Assembly: GCF_000150275.1 (NCBI RefSeq)
Contig: NW_002061024.1
Span: 8,402 to 16,007, forward strand
Origin: Trichoplax adhaerens
Taxonomy: Eukaryota; Animalia; Placozoa
Reading direction: 5' to 3'
Length of the DNA stretch: 7,606 nucleotides
Shown: positions 253 through 7,516 of the stretch, in pieces
Numbering within the stretch: position 1 is the stretch's first letter
Layout of the letters: each line of letters opens with the position of its first letter
Notes under the pieces: generated by a model
What the model was told of the DNA's origin: nothing
Databases searched by the model: none
The model's input: only the letters and a program-made list of their open reading frames with translations
Made by a program: the position numbers and the translations under genes

Positions 253-425
253 CTACAGTAAATTAAAAATAGTCCATGAAAATTCGTTTATCATAAATTG
301 TGTAAATAATGAGAAGAAAATCTTGATAAACACTTTCTGTTTATAGCATAAAAGCTTACCATCTTCTTTTACAGCATTAGCTTTCCTTTTTAAATTTTTA
401 CATGTAGAAACAACTTTACACATAC

Positions 426-671
426 GATGATCTTCAGCTACAGAGCGCAGCCCGCTTTTAAAGAGTGCTTCAACTAATGCTTTCTTTGTGTAACTCCGAC
501 CTTTTCTACGCTTATTAATACTCAACATTTGCGCACATTGATCGTCAACTGATCCAATTTTTTCAGCTATAATTTTATCGATGTCGCCTTCATCAATTCC
601 AAATTCTCTTGCCAAAGTTTTCCACTTTGTTCCAATATCTTTTACGATTTTGCCGTTATACTTCTTGGCTG
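426..671 (-). CDS. Exon encoding a death domain (FADD/TRADD/ankyrin DD-like)
   Basis: The frame of ORF 253-615 extends upstream: AKKYNGKIVKDIGTKWKTLAREFGIDEGDIDKIIAEKIGSVDDQCAQMLSINKRRKGRSYTKKALVEALFKSGLRSVAEDH. This matches the DD pattern (I/L)G.xW..LAR.LG.....ID.I...ML...L..AL...GL..VAE. It is bounded by acceptor ttattgTAG (674-672) and donor GTATGT (425-420), giving 246 nt in phase 1-1. An alternative phase-1 donor GTAAGC lies at 359-354. Confidence 0.8.
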
Positions 672-956: not shown

Positions 957-1073
957 AAGAATTGGGTTCGTCCATTTCTATCTCAACAGTTTCATTAGAA
1001 TCGACAGAGACTTTAAATCGAATTGTGGATGCACAACCAGCATTGAATTTCTCAGTTTCGTCTGATTCTTGTT
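957..1073 (-). CDS. Putative internal exon upstream of the death domain (acidic linker)
   Basis: Acceptor ctctAG (1075-1074) and consensus donor GTAAGT (956-951). It is 117 nt, phase 1-1 and open: QESDETEKFNAGCASTIRFKVSVDSNETVEIEMDEPNS. It is phase-compatible with the DD exon. Confidence 0.55.
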
Positions 1074-1307: not shown

Positions 1308-2082
1308 NNNNNNNNNNNNNNNNNNNNNNNNNNNNNNNNNNNNNNNNNNNNNNNNNNNNNNNNNNNNNNNNNNNNNNNNNNNNNNNNNNNNNNNNNNNNN
1401 NNNNNNNNNNNNNNNNNNNNNNNNNNNNNNNNNNNNNNNNNNNNNNNNNNNNNNNNNNNNNNNNNNNNNNNNNNNNNNNNNNNNNNNNNNNNNNNNNNNN
1501 NNNNNNNNNNNNNNNNNNNNNNNNNNNNNNNNNNNNNNNNNNNNNNNNNNNNNNNNNNNNNNNNNNNNNNNNNNNNNNNNNNNNNNNNNNNNNNNNNNNN
1601 NNNNNNNNNNNNNNNNNNNNNNNNNNNNNNNNNNNNNNNNNNNNNNNNNNNNNNNNNNNNNNNNNNNNNNNNNNNNNNNNNNNNNNNNNNNNNNNNNNNN
1701 NNNNNNNNNNNNNNNNNNNNNNNNNNNNNNNNNNNNNNNNNNNNNNNNNNNNNNNNNNNNNNNNNNNNNNNNNNNNNNNNNNNNNNNNNNNNNNNNNNNN
1801 NNNNNNNNNNNNNNNNNNNNNNNNNNNNNNNNNNNNNNNNNNNNNNNNNNNNNNNNNNNNNNNNNNNNNNNNNNNNNNNNNNNNNNNNNNNNNNNNNNNN
1901 NNNNNNNNNNNNNNNNNNNNNNNNNNNNNNNNNNNNNNNNNNNNNNNNNNNNNNNNNNNNNNNNNNNNNNNNNNNNNNNNNNNNNNNNNNNNNNNNNNNN
2001 NNNNNNNNNNNNNNNNNNNNNNNNNNNNNNNNNNNNNNNNNNNNNNNNNNNNNNNNNNNNNNNNNNNNNNNNNNNNNNNNNN
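1308..2082. other. Assembly gap (775 N)
   Basis: Run of N. Confidence 1.
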
Positions 2083-2774
2083 AGTTTTGTATCGCGTAGA
2101 GTTTAGAATGTAAATTACGCGTAAAGGGACGTATCAGTCTCACAATTACCATTACGAATACTTGTATTTAAATAGTATAGTATTCAAGTATTTGGCAAAG
2201 TTGTTTTCTCAGAGCTCGTAGTTGAGCGTGAACGATTAGTAAATTGAATTTCTCTTCAGAGATTATAAGTCCTGCATAGCCAGGCAATAACTTAGGATTT
2301 ACGTGCATTGCGTTATTCTGAACTCGCGGTTATGGGCAGTTTAGAGAATAGAGAAATAAAGCATTACTATACTTAACCGAAGATTACCAAGTTGTTGTGA
2401 GTCAGTAGGTCGAATATATCAGCTATCCGACAGTCGGAGTACCTCGTGAGTTAATTCCAGCTCCATCTCATCACGATATACCAAACTGTAACAATATTAT
2501 AACTACTAGCACGAATACTCATACCACCTTAGAATCACTGTTTAAGTTATATTGGGGCTGTACTACACACTACTACTACAATAGGTTTGTCATTGAACGA
2601 TTTTCGCGATCTATTAGATCTTATTAGACTAATAGACCGACTTAGAATTGAACAGGGTTGAAACGCTTATACTTTAAGAAATACTTGGTGGACATGTTGT
2701 TTACCGACTGCAATACTTCAGTATGGTGTCGTAGTGTGCTGTTAGTGCTGTAATTATAATGAAAAGCAGAATAC

Positions 2775-5240
2775 CTAAAGCAAATATCTAATCAAACACC
2801 TTACAAAACGCTCAATGGTACCTGCTAACTCATCTTCCTCTTCTTGCTTCTCGTGTTTCTCTTGCTTTTCTTGCTTCTCTTTCTCCTCTAGCTCCTCTTG
2901 ATGCCTTTTTTCCCCTTGCTCTTCTTGCTTCTCTTGCTTTTCTCGCTTCTCTTGCTCCTCTAGCTCCTTTTGCTTCTCTTTTTCCTCTTGCTCCTTTTTT
3001 TCCCCTTGCTTCTCTTGCTTCTCCTCTTGCTCTTCTTGCTCCTCATGCTCCTCTTGTTTCTCCTCTTGCTTTTCTTGCTTCTCTTGTTCCTCTTGTTTCT
3101 CTTGTTTCTCTTTGAGTGATTTCTCATTCGTAGAAATAGCTTCTTCATGCTTGCCTTCAGCAAAATATACATTTCCTAGACCGCTATACGACTCTGCCAC
3201 ATCAGGATGATTGCTACCCAAAACTGATAATTGAATCTTAAGGGATTGCTTATACATAGAAATAGCTTCTTCATGCTTGCCTTCAGCAAAATATACATTT
3301 CCTAGACCGCTATACGACTCTGCCATATCAGGATGATTGCTACCCAAAACTGATAATTGAATCTTAAGGGATTGCTCATACATGGAAATAGCTTCTTTAT
3401 GCTTGCTTTGATTACTATAGACACGACCAATGTTGCTATATGTTATAGCAATACTTGGATGATTGTCGCCAAGTTGTCTCAGTTTAATCTTGAGTGACTT
3501 GTTATACATTGATAGAGCGTCATCATACTTGCCTTGACGATTATAGACAGTTGCAATATTGCTATATGTTGTAGCAATACTTGGATAATTGTCGCCAAGT
3601 TGTGTTAGATTAATCTTGAGTGATTTGTTATACATTGATAGAGCGTCATCATACTTGCCTTGATCATCATAGACACTTGCAATGTTGTTATATGTATTAG
3701 CAATACTTGGATGATTGTCGCCAAGTTGTGTTTGTCGAATCTTGAGAGACTTGTTATACATTGATAGAGCGTCATCATACTTGCCTTGATCGCTATAGAC
3801 ATTTCCAATGTTGTTATATGTATTAGCAATACTTGGATGATTGTCGCCAAGTTTTGTTAGATTAATGTTGAGTGACTTATTATGCATTGATAGAGCGTCA
3901 TCATACTTGCCTTGATCGCTATAGACATTTCCAATGTTGTTATATGTATTAGCAATACTTGGATGATTGTCGCCAAGTTTTGTTAGATTAATCTTGAGTG
4001 ATTTGTTATACATTGATAGAGCGTCATCATACTTGCCTTGATCTTTATAGACACTTGCAATGTTGTGATATGTTGTAGCAATACTTGGATGATTGTCGCC
4101 AAGTTGTGTCAGTTTAATCTTGAGTGACTTGTTATACATTGATAGAGCGTCATCATACTTGCCTTGATCATCATAGACACTTGCAATATTGCTATATGTT
4201 GTAGCAATACTTGGATGATTGTCGCCAAGTTGTCTCAGTTTAATCTTGAGTGACTTGTTATACATTGATAGAGCGTCATCATACTTGCCTTGACGATTAT
4301 AGACAGTTGCAATATTGCTATATGTTGTAGCAATACTTGGATAATTGTCGCCAAGTTGTGTTAGATTAATCTTGAGTGATTTGTTATACATTGATAGAGC
4401 GTCATCATACTTGCCTTGATCATCATAGACACTTGCAATGTTGTTATATGTATTAGCAATACTTGGATGATTGTCGCCAAGTTGTGTTTGTCGAATCTTG
4501 AGAGACTTGTTATACATTGATAGAGCGTCATCATACTTGCCTTGATCGCTATAGACATTTCCAATGTTGTTATATGTATTAGCAATACTTGGATGATTGT
4601 CGCCAAGTTTTGTTAGATTAATGTTGAGTGACTTATTATGCATTGATAGAGCGTCATCATACTTGCCTTGATCGCTATAGACATTTCCAATGTTGTTATA
4701 TGTATTAGCAATACTTGGATGATTGTCGCCAAGTTTTGTTAGATTAATCTTGAGTGATTTGTTATACATTGATAGAGCGTCATCATACTTGCCTTGATCT
4801 TTATAGACACTTGCAATGTTGTGATATGTTGTAGCAATACTTGGATGATTGTCGCCAAGTTGTGTCAGTTTAATCTTGAGTGACTTGTTATACATTGATA
4901 GAGCGTCATCATACTTGCCTTGATCATCATAGACACTTGCAATATTGCTATATGTTGTAGCAATACTTGGATGATTGTCGCCAAGTTGTCTCAGTTTAAT
5001 CTTGAGTGACTTGTTATACATTGATAGAGCGTCATCATACTTGCCTTGACGATTATAGACAGTTGCAATATTGCTATATGTTGTAGCAATACTTGGATAA
5101 TTGTCGCCAAGTTGTGTTAGATTAATCTTGAGTGATTTGTTATACATTGATAGAGCGTCATCATACTTGCCTTGATCATCATAGACACTTGCAATGTTGT
5201 TATATGTATTAGCAATACTTGGATGATTGTCGCCAAGTGT
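2775..5240 (-). CDS. 42-residue TPR-repeat protein, copy B (5'-partial, runs into the gap): at least 14 core repeats, 3 C-cap repeats, E/K/Q-rich tail
   Basis: The tracked ORF 2775-5147 stays open upstream to the gap (LGDNHPSIANTY... starts at 5237), so Met at 5147 is internal to a repeat. The C-terminus EEEDELAGTIERFVRCLIRYLL is the same as in copy A. Confidence 0.88.
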   Translation of the reverse strand, partial: TLGDNHPSIANTYNNIASVYDDQGKYDDALSMYNKSLKINLTQLGDNYPSIATTYSNIATVYNRQGKYDDALSMYNKSLKIKLRQLGDNHPSIATTYSNIASVYDDQGKYDDALSMYNKSLKIKLTQLGDNHPSIATTYHNIASVYKDQGKYDDALSMYNKSLKINLTKLGDNHPSIANTYNNIGNVYSDQGKYDDALSMHNKSLNINLTKLGDNHPSIANTYNNIGNVYSDQGKYDDALSMYNKSLKIRQTQLGDNHPSIANTYNNIASVYDDQGKYDDALSMYNKSLKINLTQLGDNYPSIATTYSNIATVYNRQGKYDDALSMYNKSLKIKLRQLGDNHPSIATTYSNIASVYDDQGKYDDALSMYNKSLKIKLTQLGDNHPSIATTYHNIASVYKDQGKYDDALSMYNKSLKINLTKLGDNHPSIANTYNNIGNVYSDQGKYDDALSMHNKSLNINLTKLGDNHPSIANTYNNIGNVYSDQGKYDDALSMYNKSLKIRQTQLGDNHPSIANTYNNIASVYDDQGKYDDALSMYNKSLKINLTQLGDNYPSIATTYSNIATVYNRQGKYDDALSMYNKSLKIKLRQLGDNHPSIAITYSNIGRVYSNQSKHKEAISMYEQSLKIQLSVLGSNHPDMAESYSGLGNVYFAEGKHEEAISMYKQSLKIQLSVLGSNHPDVAESYSGLGNVYFAEGKHEEAISTNEKSLKEKQEKQEEQEKQEKQEEKQEEHEEQEEQEEKQEKQGEKKEQEEKEKQKELEEQEKREKQEKQEEQGEKRHQEELEEKEKQEKQEKHEKQEEEDELAGTIERFVRCLIRYLL
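2833..3112 (-). repeat. Low-complexity purine-rich coding repeat (about 9-nt CAAGAGAAG-like units) encoding the E/K/Q tail of copy B
   Basis: The + strand is a ctcttgctt-like pyrimidine tract. It translates as KEKQEKQEEQEKQEKQEEKQ... Confidence 0.9.
3474..5237. repeat. Coding tandem array: 14 x 126-bp units forming a 756-bp six-unit higher-order repeat, (abcdef)x2 + ab
   Basis: The unit order in the translation recurs every 252 aa. Shadow ORFs 3605-3850 and 4361-4606 are identical and exactly 756 bp apart. Confidence 0.95.
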
Positions 5241-5241
5241 G

Positions 5242-5291
5242 NNNNNNNNNNNNNNNNNNNNNNNNNNNNNNNNNNNNNNNNNNNNNNNNNN
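5242..5291. other. Assembly gap (50 N, probably a placeholder size)
   Basis: Exactly 50 N. The bases flanking it on both sides deviate from their repeat copies by small indels or substitutions, as expected at low-quality contig ends. Confidence 0.98.
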
Positions 5292-5297
5292 TCATGC

Positions 5298-5530
5298 TTA
5301 AGTTATATTGGGGCTGTACTATACACTACTATTACAATAGGTTTGTCATTGAACGATTTTCGCGATCTATTCGATCTTATTAGACTAATAGACCGACTTA
5401 GAATTGAACAGGGTTGAAACGCCTATACTTTAAGAAATACTTGGTGGACATGTTGTTTACCGACTGCAATACTTCAGTATGGTGTCGTAGTGTGCTGTTA
5501 GTGCTGTAATTATAATGAAAAGCAGAATAC
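5298..5530. repeat. Second copy of the 3' flank 2542-2774 (offset 2756)
   Basis: By-eye alignment gives about 4 substitutions in about 233 bp with no indels. Homology runs up to the 50-N gap. Confidence 0.92.
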
Positions 5531-7516
5531 CTAAAGCAAATATCTAATCAAACACCTTACAAAGCGCTCAATGGTACCTGCTAACTCATCTTCCTCTTCT
5601 TGCTTCTCGTGTTTCTCTTGCTTTTCTTGCTTCTCTTTCTCTTCTAGCTCCTCTTGATGCCTTTTTTCCCCTTGCTCTTCTTGCTTCTCTTGCTTCTCTT
5701 GTTTCTTCTCTTGCTTTTCTCGCTTCTCTTGCTCCTCTAGCTCCTTTTGCTTCTCTTTTTCCTCTTGCTCCCTATTTTCCCCTTGTTTCTCTTGCTTCTC
5801 CTCTTGCTCTTCTTGCTTCTCATGCTCCTCTTGTTTCTCCTCTTGCTTTTCTTGCTTCTCTTGTTCCTCTTGTTTCTCTTTGAGTGATTTCTCATTCGTA
5901 GAAATAGCTTCTTCACGCTTACCTTCAGCTTGATAGACATTTCTTAGATTGTTATATGACTTTGCGACATCAGGATGGTTGTGACCCAAAACTGATAATA
6001 GAATGTTATAGGATTGCTCGTACATAGAAATAGCTTCTTCATGCTTGCCTTCAGCAAGATATACATTTCCTAGACCGCTATACGACTTTGCCACATCAGG
6101 ATGATTGCGACCCAAAACTGATAATTGAATCTTAAGGGATTGCTTATACATAGAAATAGCTTCTTTATGCTTGCTTTGATTACTATAGACACGACCAATG
6201 TTGCTATATGTTATAGCAATACTTGGATGATTGTCGCCAAGTTGTCTCAGATTAATGTTGAGTGACTTGTTATACATTGATAGAGCGTCATCATACTTGC
6301 CTTGATGATAATAGACACTTGCAATGTTGTTATATGTTACAGCAATACTTGGATGATTGTCGCCAAGTTGTGTTTGTGTAATCTTGAGTGACTTGTTATA
6401 CATTGATAGAGCGTCATCATACTTGCCTTGACGATTATAGACACTTGCAATGTTGTGATATGTATCAGCAATACTTGGATGATTGTCGCCAAGTTGTGTT
6501 AGGTTAATCTTGAGTGACTTGTTATACATTGATAGAGCGTCATCATACTTGCCTTGATTATGATAGACATTTGCAATGTTGTTATATGTATCAGCAATAC
6601 TCGGATGATTGTCGCCAAGTTGTGTCAGATTAATGTTGAGTGACTTGTTATACATTGATAGAGCGTCATCATACTTGCCTTGATGATTATAGACATTTGC
6701 AATGTTGTTATATGTATCAGCAATACTTGGATGATTGTCGCCAAGTTGTGTCAGTTTAATCTTGAGTGACTTGTTATACATTGATAGAGCGTCATCATAC
6801 TTGCCTTGATTATCATAGACAAGACCAATGTTGTTATATGTTGTAGCAATACTTGGATGATTGTCGCCAAGTTGTGTTAGGTTAATCTTGAGTGACTTGT
6901 TATGCATTGATAGAGCGTCATCATACTTGCCTAGGTCTTGATAGACTTGTCCAATGCTGTCATATAATACAGCAATACTTGGATCATTATTTTCAAGAAT
7001 TTTCAGTTTAATCCTTAATGATTTATTGTATTCTTTTAATGCCTCGTCATGCTTGCCTTGATTGTGGTAGACCAAGCCGACCTTCTGATAGGACTTACAG
7101 ACATCAAGATGTTCACTCCCTAACGATTTTAATTTTATTTGAAGTGATTTGTTGTAATCACTCAAAGCACCCATAAAATCACTTTGAAGTCGTTTACAGT
7201 CGCCCTGGATATCGAAACAATAAGAAATCTTGACCTCTTCTAGTTTCTTAGCTAACTTTTCTGCTTTTCCACTGTATTCATTGGCTTCTATCAATTGATA
7301 TTTTTCCAGGTAAGATTGAGCCATAGCGAGATAAATAGAATATTCAAGTTGACGACGACAATCACTACTCTCCGCTATCGATTTGATTTGAGTTACAGCT
7401 TTTTGAAAATAAAATAATGCGTCTTCATAATTGCCTTCGCCATGATATTTCACGCCCTTTTTGCGTATAGATTCAATCTCGTCAAATATCGTAGAATTGC
7501 TAGTTCGATTGCCCAT
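5531..7516 (-). CDS. 42-residue TPR-repeat protein (kinesin-light-chain/nephrocystin-3-type repeats), copy A: MG-x3-S start, divergent N-cap TPRs, 5 near-identical core repeats, 3 C-cap repeats, E/K/Q-rich tail
   Basis: 661-aa ORF. An in-frame TAA at 7522-7520 lies just upstream of the ATG and there is an A at -3, which fixes the start. The repeat LGDNHPSIAxTYxNIxxVYxxQGKYDDALSMYNKSLxIxLxQ fits the TPR consensus (Y4, I7, G/A8, Y11, G15, Y17, A20, Y24). The true 3' end may be spliced at the CAG|GTACCA donor at 5577. Confidence 0.9.
   Translation of the reverse strand: MGNRTSNSTIFDEIESIRKKGVKYHGEGNYEDALFYFQKAVTQIKSIAESSDCRRQLEYSIYLAMAQSYLEKYQLIEANEYSGKAEKLAKKLEEVKISYCFDIQGDCKRLQSDFMGALSDYNKSLQIKLKSLGSEHLDVCKSYQKVGLVYHNQGKHDEALKEYNKSLRIKLKILENNDPSIAVLYDSIGQVYQDLGKYDDALSMHNKSLKINLTQLGDNHPSIATTYNNIGLVYDNQGKYDDALSMYNKSLKIKLTQLGDNHPSIADTYNNIANVYNHQGKYDDALSMYNKSLNINLTQLGDNHPSIADTYNNIANVYHNQGKYDDALSMYNKSLKINLTQLGDNHPSIADTYHNIASVYNRQGKYDDALSMYNKSLKITQTQLGDNHPSIAVTYNNIASVYYHQGKYDDALSMYNKSLNINLRQLGDNHPSIAITYSNIGRVYSNQSKHKEAISMYKQSLKIQLSVLGRNHPDVAKSYSGLGNVYLAEGKHEEAISMYEQSYNILLSVLGHNHPDVAKSYNNLRNVYQAEGKREEAISTNEKSLKEKQEEQEKQEKQEEKQEEHEKQEEQEEKQEKQGENREQEEKEKQKELEEQEKREKQEKKQEKQEKQEEQGEKRHQEELEEKEKQEKQEKHEKQEEEDELAGTIERFVRCLIRYLL
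5589..5881 (-). repeat. Low-complexity coding repeat encoding the E/K/Q tail of copy A
   Basis: Same pattern as copy B, differing by in-frame indels and a few substitutions. Confidence 0.9.
6242..6871. repeat. Coding tandem array: 5 x 126-bp core units of copy A, flanked by diverged units (about 5864-6241 and 6872-7123)
   Basis: ggatgattgtcgccaagttg and cattgatagagcgtcatcatacttgcct recur at a 126-bp period. Confidence 0.95.

What the first reader, a model, noticed from the sequence alone, without database searches (positions are those of the whole stretch)
3474..6871. Repeat variation is concentrated at ligand-binding groove positions, like a combinatorial code
Seen: across 19 core units (11 distinct types) most of the scaffold is invariant even in DNA. 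Variation falls at TPR position 2 (T/N/D/V), 5 (S/N/H), 8-9 (AS/AT/GN/GL/AN), 12-13 (DD, NR, KD, SD, DN, NH, HN, YH) and 31-33 (NLT, KLR, KLT, RQT, TQT, NLR). Only a few synonymous variants occur (aac/aat, cta/ctg, aag/aaa, tca/tct). Known: positions 2, 5, 6, 9, 12 and 13 line the concave TPR binding face. Inference: concerted evolution plus diversifying selection. The 12-13 di-residue is reminiscent of a TALE-RVD or PPR-style per-repeat specificity code, with a peptide or nucleic-acid ligand unknown.
Basis: partly seen in the sequence, partly recalled or inferred. Interest (0 to 1): 0.8.

Follow-up and report, generated by a model that had tools for sequence, protein, structure and literature searches.

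The report
Hypervariable-groove TPR arrays in Trichoplax
Two copies of a Trichoplax gene carry runs of nearly identical 42-residue TPR repeats that differ almost only at the residues expected to touch a bound peptide; this is a fast-evolving binding surface of the kind known from fungal immune receptors, not a TALE-like code.

Summary
The counts are right: 19 core units and 11 types, with variation at unit positions 2, 5, 8-9, 12-13 and 31-33, and also 29 and 34. But 3474-6871 is not one array. It spans two minus-strand gene copies, separated by a stop codon, 239 bp of 3' flank and the assembly gap, with no frame continuity. Fourteen of the units are 2.37 exact copies of one 756-bp six-unit block, so only 11 units are independent.

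Scaffold codons are 97-99.6% identical in DNA. The six a-priori groove codons hold 62% of non-synonymous differences (p = 2.5e-5). Their pN is about 3 times the unit's pS (95% interval 1.4-7.5). All six positions with three or more residues are peptide-contact positions in kinesin light chain 1 (p = 1.6e-5).

Best reading: a highly internally conserved TPR array, shaped by unequal crossover and conversion plus diversifying selection on a peptide-binding groove. This regime is known from fungal NLRs. Here the protein has no NOD domain, starts with a myristoylation motif, and probably splices to a Death domain.

A TALE/PPR-like di-residue code is not supported.

The scan found the same pattern before on other DNA of this genome (s1-739359, s1-741782).

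The parts
5531..7516 (-). Copy A: complete 661-codon ORF. It holds the MGNRTS start, degenerate TPRs, the core array, cap TPRs and an E/K/Q tail. The last 15 codons are probably intron read-through.
   Evidence: TPR_12 7e-150, TPR_NPHP3 1e-88; no NOD domain
7496..7516 (-). Start codon plus G-N-R-T-S-N, which fits the PROSITE N-myristoylation pattern
   Evidence: Paralogs P0200 (MGNKHS) and the H2 ORF at L003:11869 (MGIWTS) share it. Pattern match only.
6848..7477 (-). N-terminal degenerate TPR-like units A00-A03 and transitional unit A04 (79% identical to the core consensus)
6218..6847 (-). Copy A core array: five highly internally conserved 42-codon units (A05-A09), all of different type
5903..6217 (-). 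Copy A cap units A10-A12, 33-55% identical to the core consensus
5578..5902 (-). Copy A charged tail, 109 residues, 84% E/K/Q/R, 9-bp periodic. It ends at a candidate phase-1 donor, G|GTACCA, with GT at 5577-5576.
5292..5530 (-). 3' flank of copy A, about 98% identical to the 3' flank of copy B (2540-2775)
5242..5291 (.). Assembly gap. It separates A's non-coding flank from the middle of B's array. There is no frame continuity, and the 5' end of copy B is missing.
3450..5241 (-). Copy B core array: 14 units plus a partial one, made of a 756-bp six-unit block (types B00-B05) repeated 2.37 times without a mismatch
3135..3449 (-). Copy B cap units B14-B16. B15 and B16 are more alike (95%) than A11 and A12 (85%).
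2822..3134 (-). Copy B charged tail, 105 residues, ending at the same candidate donor (GT at 2821-2820)
2540..2821 (-). Read-through codons, stop at 2775, and the 3' flank or intron of copy B
957..1073 (-). Candidate 117-nt exon X. It is phase 1-1, with acceptor ctctag and strong donor GTAAGT, and carries an in-frame 42-nt indel relative to paralog L002.
   Evidence: inference, no transcript evidence
360..671 (-). Death-domain exon, 312 nt, phase 1-1, compatible with the donor at the end of the tail
   Evidence: (Pfam Death 30.8 bits, cut-off 22.6)

Best explanation
The interval covers the central repeat arrays of two copies of one Trichoplax adhaerens gene. The copies are either tandem paralogs or two alleles or paralogs joined wrongly by the scaffolder.

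The gene encodes a cytosolic solenoid of 42-residue, kinesin-light-chain-type TPRs. Its central units are kept almost identical by unequal crossover and gene conversion between units. The same process changes unit number and order.

Selection favours amino-acid change at the helix-A residues that line the concave groove (positions 2, 5, 9, 12, 13) and at position 31 on the groove rim. An invariant Asn at position 6 would hold the backbone of an extended peptide. The result is a quickly re-programmable peptide- or protein-binding surface.

Shown here: the anatomy, the concentration of change, the excess over synonymous change, and the match to KLC1 contact positions.

Inferred: the ligand is a peptide or protein; the protein is myristoylated; it signals through a Death domain spliced on downstream; it acts as a sensor or adaptor in a death-fold (immune-type) network.
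For: - Two ORFs share one architecture.
- There are 19 units of 11 types. The scaffold is 97.4-99.6% identical in DNA, while mean protein identity is 85%.
- A 756-bp block is repeated 2.37 times exactly. Copy A has 5 core units and copy B at least 14, with no unit type shared.
- Thirty pairs of variable sites fail the four-gamete test.
- The six a-priori groove codons hold 62% of non-synonymous differences, p = 2.5e-5.
- Groove pN over pS is 3.2 (1.4-7.5) against all codons and 4.3 (1.8-13.2) against non-groove codons.
- Minimum state changes are 16N:1S against 10N:7S, Fisher p = 0.039. The groove non-synonymous rate against the synonymous rate gives binomial p = 0.005.
- In the AlphaFold model, pLDDT is above 90 over the TPRs. 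Helix A spans positions 40'-13 and helix B spans 17-35.
- The best structural fit is ligand-bound KLC1 TPR, 6fv0 and 6fuz, TM 0.76.
- A gapless alignment to KLC1, combined with the contact list in PMC6214655, puts KLC1 contacts at unit positions 2, 5, 6, 9, 10, 12, 13, 17 and 31. All six window positions with three or more states are in that set, p = 1.6e-5.
- The helix-A variable positions span a 100-degree arc (R = 0.80).
- The same regime is described for fungal NLR TPRs (PMC4986451, PMC13449251).
Against: - Only 11 independent units come from one individual's assembly.
- The NG86 ratio inside the groove codons alone is 0.95.
- No tree-based or recombination-aware codon model was run.
- Variation at 29 and 32-34 is not on one helical face and is not a known contact.
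- Copy B's block copy number and the A-B join are doubtful.
- No close family members could be fetched to enlarge the sample.
- No ligand, expression or splicing evidence is available.
Confidence: 0.68

Rival explanations
1. Neutral pattern. The array expanded very recently, so synonymous change is low everywhere. The variable positions are simply unconstrained surface residues, and no selection for diversity acts.
For: The within-codon NG86 ratio at groove codons is 0.95 and the whole-unit ratio is 0.78. Exact 756-bp duplicates show very recent expansion. Every hypervariable position still has Asn AAY as one state, and 13 of 19 other codons are one step away, so the diversity is shallow.
Against: Without constraint, pN cannot exceed pS. 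Yet groove pN is 0.33 against pS of 0.08-0.11, and the bootstrap fraction at or below 1 is 0.002-0.004. Conversion that homogenises codons 14-28 would also erase neutral variants at 12-13. The convex-face surface residues of helix B (18, 19, 22, 25, 26) do not vary.
Confidence: 0.15
2. A TALE- or PPR-like per-repeat code. Each unit reads one base or residue of a linear ligand through the 12-13 di-residue, possibly on a nucleic acid.
For: The units are nearly identical, with the greatest diversity at 12-13 (8 pairs in 11 types). Pfam PPR models give secondary hits.
Against: Five other positions vary as much, and in mosaic combinations. There is no small reused alphabet. Groove charge is -2 to +1 per unit, with no basic stripe. 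The period of 42 and the gapless match are to KLC TPRs, which bind peptides. PPR scores (1e-20) are far below TPR_12 (7e-150).
Confidence: 0.04
3. Assembly artefact. The unit variants or their order arise from collapsed or chimeric Sanger reads of a larger repeat family, so the pattern is not that of real genes.
For: The window matches short, gapped scaffolds of the 2008 assembly. Copy B's array ends in a gap and is built from exact 756-bp copies. Copy A has no room for its own downstream exons before copy B unless the 50-N gap hides several kb.
Against: Both ORFs are open over 661 and 821 codons. Variants fall at the same codons in both contigs and avoid frameshifts and stops. Chimeric reads would shuffle units but would not create groove-restricted differences. 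Earlier follow-ups report the same pattern at other loci of this genome (not checked here).
Confidence: 0.08

Closest known systems
Highly internally conserved (HIC) TPR repeats of fungal NLRs (e.g. Podospora Pa_2_10340; 42-residue repeat structure 4Y6C/4Y6W)
   Same: Both have 42-residue KLC-type TPR units at about 85% or more internal identity. Both show repeat-number differences between copies. Both have hypervariable, positively selected sites on the concave face of the helices (PMC4986451, PMC13449251). The 4Y6C and 4Y6W chains hit the array at 1e-19 to 1e-22.
   Different: Complete copy A has no NB-ARC or NACHT module. The organism is an animal (a placozoan). The protein has an N-terminal myristoylation motif, a 105-109-residue E/K/Q tail and a probable Death-domain exon. 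RIP plays no part.
Kinesin light chain TPR domain (KLC1/KLC2)
   Same: The unit length and register are the same, with a gapless 151-residue alignment at about 30% identity. The model superposes best on peptide-bound KLC1. An Asn sits at position 6, and contact positions 2, 5, 9, 12, 13 and 31 are shared.
   Different: KLC has six diverged repeats conserved across animals. This protein has 5 to at least 14 near-identical units that differ at exactly those contacts. It has no heptad-repeat region for binding a kinesin heavy chain.
Placozoan NB-ARC/NACHT proteins with TPR or WD40 repeats (Kamm et al. 2019, PMC6321704)
   Same: Same organism group and same repeat class. A Death module 82-90% identical to the one in this window sits on an NB-ARC-Roc-COR protein (P0124) and on a TIR protein (P0121).
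   Different: This gene has no NOD module. That paper does not describe internal conservation or hypervariable positions, and it judged the TPR/WD40 NLRs unlikely to act in recognition.
TALE repeats with repeat-variable di-residues
   Same: Both have near-identical tandem units with hypervariable residues at positions 12-13 of a helical repeat.
   Different: TALE variation is confined to the di-residue and uses a small alphabet, one base per repeat, on DNA. Here six to eleven positions vary, the groove is not basic, and the homologous fold binds peptides.

Membership tests
TPR_12 / KLC-type 42-residue TPR | Pfam TPR_12/TPR_10 match, 42-residue period and a helix A-turn-helix B fold | tested here: met
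   TPR_12 7e-150 and 2e-202, TPR_10 1e-85. TRF period 126. Model helices at 40'-13 and 17-35. Foldseek hits to KLC1 and OGT TPR.
HIC (highly internally conserved) repeat arrays | At least about 85% identity between units over at least 100 residues (Dyrka 2014 criterion) | tested here: met
   Mean pairwise protein identity is 0.85 for the 19 units and 0.84 for the 11 types, which is borderline. DNA identity is 0.92, and 0.974-0.996 at scaffold codons.
HIC repeat arrays | Repeat-number and repeat-order differences between alleles or copies | tested here: met
   Copy A has 5 core units and copy B at least 14, with no shared type. An exact 756-bp block is duplicated. Whether the copies are alleles or paralogs is unresolved.
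HIC repeat arrays | Hypervariable positions lie on the ligand-binding surface | tested here: met
   All six positions with three or more states coincide with KLC1 peptide contacts, p = 1.6e-5 (PMC6214655). They also match the concave hypervariable TPR positions 2, 5, 9, 12, 13 (PMC1261162). Positions 29 and 32-34 are not known contacts.
HIC repeat arrays | Positive diversifying selection at those codons, by site models robust to recombination | tested here: inconclusive
   Groove pN over unit pS is 3.2 (1.4-7.5), and the tree-free count test gives p = 0.005. The within-codon NG86 ratio is 0.95. No FUBAR, MEME or PARRIS run was possible, and only 11 units were available.
NLR / STAND receptors | Central NB-ARC or NACHT NTPase domain | tested here: not met
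   No NTPase family appears among the Pfam hits of the complete copy A or of its N-terminal 140 residues.
TALE-like repeat code | Variation restricted to a di-residue, a small reused alphabet and a nucleic-acid-binding surface | tested here: not met
   Thirteen codons vary, six of them with three or more states. There are 8 di-residues in 11 types. Groove charge is -2 to +1. Binding itself cannot be tested here.
PPR | 35-residue period and best match to PPR models | tested here: not met
   The period is 42. PPR scores 1e-20 against 7e-150 for TPR_12.
Diversity-generating retroelement target | Reverse transcriptase plus a template/variable repeat pair with adenine-specific changes | tested here: not met
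   The window has no other ORF longer than 120 codons. Changes also occur at non-A sites and at third positions. The genome is eukaryotic.
Death-domain protein | Death fold encoded in the same transcript as the TPR array | not testable with these tools
   The exon at 671..360 scores 30.8 bits against a cut-off of 22.6. Strand, phase-1 donors and acceptors, and conserved synteny in L002 all fit. No transcript data were available, and the exons were not joined for any search.
N-myristoylated proteins | N-terminal Met-Gly followed by the NMT recognition pattern | tested here: met
   MGNRTSN fits G-{EDRKHPFYW}-x(2)-[STAGCN]-{P}. Two paralogs fit too. The modification itself is untested.

The most novel reading that the evidence does not exclude
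Trichoplax may run a split, germline-variable receptor system. Membrane-tethered proteins with hypervariable TPR grooves would act as the sensors. Through a Death domain that is 82-90% identical to those on separate NB-ARC-Roc-COR and TIR proteins, they would recruit the oligomerising and signalling modules in trans. Unit shuffling inside the TPR arrays would supply the recognition diversity. This would be an NLR-like immune or allorecognition logic, split over several polypeptides, in one of the simplest animals.
Probability: 0.15. Interest if true: 0.85.

Novelty: new variant of a known kind. Interest (0 to 1): 0.58.

Why it matters
Repeat arrays that stay uniform except on their binding face are the hallmark of fast-diversifying recognition proteins in fungi. 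In the literature I could search, they are noted only in general terms for animals, and not at all for placozoans.

A placozoan version without a NOD domain, tied to a Death module shared with NB-ARC and TIR proteins, would bear on how early animals built recognition diversity.

It also offers a natural scaffold, with fixed framework positions and six to seven specificity positions per unit, for engineering modular peptide binders.

Tried and rejected
- Whole-genome search of the window's own assembly: no genome is held.
- Exact-product look-up of copy A: not on record.
- Word search with copy A: the best hits are cyanobacterial and rotifer TPR proteins at 51% identity or less.
- Word search with its N-terminal 140 residues: nothing.
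- Word search with the six-unit block: best are P0200 (57%, metagenome contig) and Trichoplax sp. H2 'Nephrocystin-3' P0207 (57%). No close family members could be fetched, so no genome-wide unit alignment was made.
- The H2 paralog locus L003 has only about 76% internal identity and no Death exon of this type.
- NG86 restricted to the groove codons gives 0.95. I rejected it as a test because the six codons hold only about 2.5 synonymous sites and multi-step codon paths inflate pS.
- DGR-like adenine mutagenesis was considered, because every hypervariable codon set contains AAY. I rejected it (no RT).
- Marold et al. 2015 (42-residue repeat structure) is not held.
- Model coordinates are not exposed, so no surface map could be computed. 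I used helical phase and KLC1 contact positions instead.
- The protein atlas was busy.
- Complex prediction was not run. Death-Death pairing is only part of the speculative reading.
- The spliced model was searched exon by exon only; the joined product was not built.
Full report
**What is in the window.** The window is low in G+C (about 35%), sparsely coding, and holds three runs of N: position 98, 1308-2082 and 5242-5291. Earlier notes of this scan name the genome as Trichoplax adhaerens. I checked this: window 1-948 matches scaffold DS985679 of GCA_000150275.1 at 94.3%, and 399-1307 and 2083-2182 match DS985451 at 90-96%.

All features of interest lie on the minus strand. Copy A (7516..5531) is a complete 661-codon ORF. 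Copy B (5241..2775) is open for 821 codons, but its 5' end is cut off by the gap.

Both copies have the same plan: 42-residue TPR units (TPR_12 7e-150 and 2e-202; TPR_NPHP3), three diverged cap units, and a 105-109-residue tail that is 84-85% E/K/Q/R. Copy A also shows the N-terminus. It has the start MGNRTS, which fits the PROSITE N-myristoylation pattern, followed by four degenerate TPR-like units. It has no NB-ARC, NACHT or other domain.

**The gap, tested first.** The high side of 5242-5291 is 239 bp of non-coding sequence after copy A's stop codon. It is about 98% identical to the sequence after copy B's stop. The low side begins in the middle of a TPR unit of copy B. So the letters on the two sides are neither continuous nor in one frame, and the finding's interval 3474-6871 spans two arrays in two ORFs.

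**The observation.** I cut both ORFs in the TPR register.

Synonymous variants occur at only eight codons. The numbering is right: the units align to consensus TPR with an eight-residue insertion after position 31, and to kinesin light chain 1 without any gap over 151 residues.

Two caveats apply. First, B's fourteen units are a six-unit, 756-bp block repeated 2.37 times, with no mismatch over 1037 nt at that offset. Only 11 units are therefore independent. Because this exact repeat runs into the gap, its copy number in a Sanger assembly is uncertain. Second, A and B share no unit type.

**Is the concentration real?**
- Excluding the eleven recurrently variable codons, DNA identity between units is 99.6% within A, 97.4% within B and 98.4% between A and B. 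This is about the same as the 97.9% identity of the two 3' flanks.
- Mean protein identity of the units is 85%.
- The six codons that the literature names a priori as TPR ligand contacts (2, 5, 6, 9, 12, 13; PMC1261162) make up 14% of the unit. They carry 62% of all non-synonymous differences (permutation p = 2.5e-5).
- A tree-free minimum count gives 16 amino-acid state changes to 1 synonymous change in these codons, against 10 to 7 elsewhere (Fisher p = 0.039). Per site, the groove non-synonymous rate is 3.2 times the unit's synonymous rate (binomial p = 0.005).
- With Nei-Gojobori proportions, groove pN is 0.33, pS of all codons is 0.11, and pS of non-groove codons is 0.08. Bootstrapping over codons gives ratios of 3.2 (95% interval 1.4-7.5) and 4.3 (1.8-13.2).
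- The remaining scaffold is under purifying selection, with pN/pS of 0.11.

The ratio computed inside the groove codons alone is 0.95. Those six codons hold only about 2.5 synonymous sites, and the multi-step codon differences are split over paths, so I do not regard that figure as a test. I could not run a recombination-aware site model, and I found no further units of this consensus. Formal proof of omega above 1 per codon is therefore still open.

**Where the variable residues sit.** An AlphaFold2 model of copy A residues 1-560 has pLDDT above 90 over the TPR region. It places helix A at unit positions 40'-13, helix B at 17-35, and the loop at 36-39. Its best local superpositions are the peptide-bound KLC1 TPR domains 6fv0 and 6fuz (TM 0.76, rmsd 3.8-3.9 A).

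The eLife paper on KLC1 with the JIP1 and TorsinA peptides lists the contact residues (PMC6214655). Using the gapless alignment, these fall at unit positions 2, 5, 6, 9, 10, 12, 13, 17 and 31. Every residue letter agrees with that placement.

All six window positions that show three or more amino acids (2, 5, 9, 12, 13, 31) belong to this set. The chance of that is 1.6e-5. Position 6, where KLC1's Asn pairs hydrogen-bond the peptide main chain, is an invariant Asn here.

On a helical wheel, the variable helix-A positions span 100 degrees (R = 0.80) and the invariant ones fill the other side. Model coordinates are not exposed, so I could not compute a surface map.

The second cluster (29, 32, 33, 34) lies at the extended end of helix B and points all round the helix (R = 0.11). 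Apart from position 31, it is not a known contact. The criterion of one continuous surface is therefore met for the main cluster only.

**How the diversity looks at codon level.** Each of the six hypervariable positions has Asn (AAY) as one of its states. Thirteen of the nineteen other codons are one nucleotide step from AAY. The amino-acid alphabet (D, H, Y, S, T, K, then R, L, V) is thus a shallow mutational cloud around an all-Asn groove.

Thirty pairs of variable sites within the 126-bp unit fail the four-gamete test. Variants have therefore been reshuffled by conversion or have arisen repeatedly.

Together with the exact 756-bp duplication and the 5 versus at least 14 units, this fits unequal crossover and gene conversion as the homogenising and shuffling process. 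Selection would then preserve and promote groove differences.

**The code reading.** A TALE- or PPR-like di-residue code is not supported. Positions 12-13 are the most diverse, but five other positions vary as well, in mosaic combinations. There are eight di-residues among eleven types rather than a small reused alphabet. The six groove residues of a unit carry a net charge of -2 to +1, with no basic stripe. The homologous fold binds extended peptides. The PPR hits in Pfam are secondary to TPR_12 by 130 orders of magnitude. "Combinatorial" is fair only in the sense that unit shuffling recombines binding modules.

**Gene context (inferred).** Both tails end in ...DELAG, with GCAG|GTACCA. The 15 codons that follow before the stop look like intron read-through.

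Downstream on the same strand lie two open, phase 1-1 exons:
- Exon X at 1073..957 is 117 nt. It has a pyrimidine-rich acceptor, a GTAAGT donor, and an in-frame 42-nt indel relative to paralog L002.
- A Death-domain exon at 671..360 is 312 nt (Pfam Death 30.8 bits against a cut-off of 22.6).

The phase-1 donor of the tail fits both. Scaffold DS985451 (L002) carries the same order: TPR-gene flank, 1.3 kb, exon X, Death exon. It therefore fills the 775-N gap. Scaffold DS985679 (L001) shows that further exons follow the Death exon beyond the window's left edge. I searched the exons separately and did not build the joined product. There is no transcript evidence.

The Death module is 82-90% identical to those of a TIR-Death protein, a Death-NB-ARC-APAF1_C-Roc-COR protein and others of T. 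adhaerens.

If A and B are truly adjacent, A has no room for its own exon X and Death exon unless the 50-N gap hides several kilobases. The join is therefore doubtful. The two copies differ by 2% in flank and tail, and may be alleles or unlinked paralogs.

**Comparison with what is known.** Arrays of near-identical WD40, ANK and TPR units, with repeat-number polymorphism and positively selected sites on the binding face, are established for fungal NLRs. These include 42-residue TPRs modelled on KLC2 (PMC4986451). They were recently said to occur in NLRs of animals, plants and bacteria as well (PMC13449251). The Podospora 42-residue repeat structures 4Y6C and 4Y6W hit this array.

Kamm et al. 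describe 42 NACHT/NB-ARC genes with TPR or WD40 repeats in Trichoplax sp. H2. They do not mention internal conservation or hypervariable positions (PMC6321704). No paper in the library combines Trichoplax, tetratricopeptide and diversifying selection.

This locus meets the repeat-level criteria of the HIC class. It fails the NLR criterion because it has no NOD module. I file it as a new variant of a known kind.

Two earlier follow-ups of this scan reached the same reading on other DNA of this genome (s1-739359, s1-741782). I did not re-test their loci.

Noticed in passing
window 360-671 (-); proteins P0121, P0122, P0123, P0124: The Death-domain exon is a phase 1-1 module. It recurs at 82-90% identity in T. 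adhaerens gene models with quite different partners: TIR_2 plus Death, Death plus about 370 residues with no Pfam match, and Death plus NB-ARC, APAF1_C, Roc and COR-A. This looks like recent exon shuffling of one Death module among immune-type genes.
   Followed up: partly
window 957-1073 (-) and L002:1627-1699: A candidate 117-nt phase 1-1 exon lies between the TPR tail and the Death exon. It stays open in both copies despite a 42-nt (in-frame) indel, and it has a consensus GTAAGT donor. The JGI model P0123 starts at an internal Met of it.
   Followed up: partly
window 1308-2082 (gap) versus L002:101-1395: Scaffold DS985451 is collinear with both sides of the 775-N gap, at 96% and 90% identity. 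It holds 1295 bp there, so the gap length is underestimated if the two are equivalent.
   Followed up: yes
window 5242-5291 and flanks: If copies A and B are truly adjacent, copy A lacks its own exon X and Death exon, and copy B lacks its promoter and N-terminus, unless the 50-N gap hides several kb. The scaffold join may link alleles or paralogs.
   Followed up: partly
window codons 2, 5, 9, 12, 13, 31 of units at 3450-5213 and 6218-6847: Every hypervariable position keeps Asn (AAY) as one state, and most other states are single-step neighbours of AAY. The ancestral groove was probably an all-Asn ladder.
   Followed up: yes
window 3118-3406 versus 5886-6174: The two last cap units are 95% alike in copy B but only 85% alike in copy A. 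Cap TPRs differ by 8.4% between the copies, while flank and tail differ by 2%. This points to local conversion inside copy B's cap.
   Followed up: partly
window 2842-3112 and 5598-5880: The E/K/Q tail is itself a 9-bp tandem array of about 30 copies. It differs between the copies by 9-nt and 21-nt in-frame indels. It may form a long single alpha-helix spacer.
   Followed up: no
L003:11869-18830 (Trichoplax sp. H2 contig NOWV01000140): An H2 paralog has the same MG...S start and N-terminal domain, but its TPR units are only about 76% alike. It is modelled as one 1524-residue protein together with a Roc/COR-like region.
   Followed up: partly
L004 (ENA metagenome contig k141_911695), protein P0200: A 374-residue protein in a marine metagenome assembly is the closest database relative of the array (57%). 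It has an MGNKHS start, the same N-terminal domain and 42-residue units. It is presumably placozoan DNA in an environmental sample.
   Followed up: no
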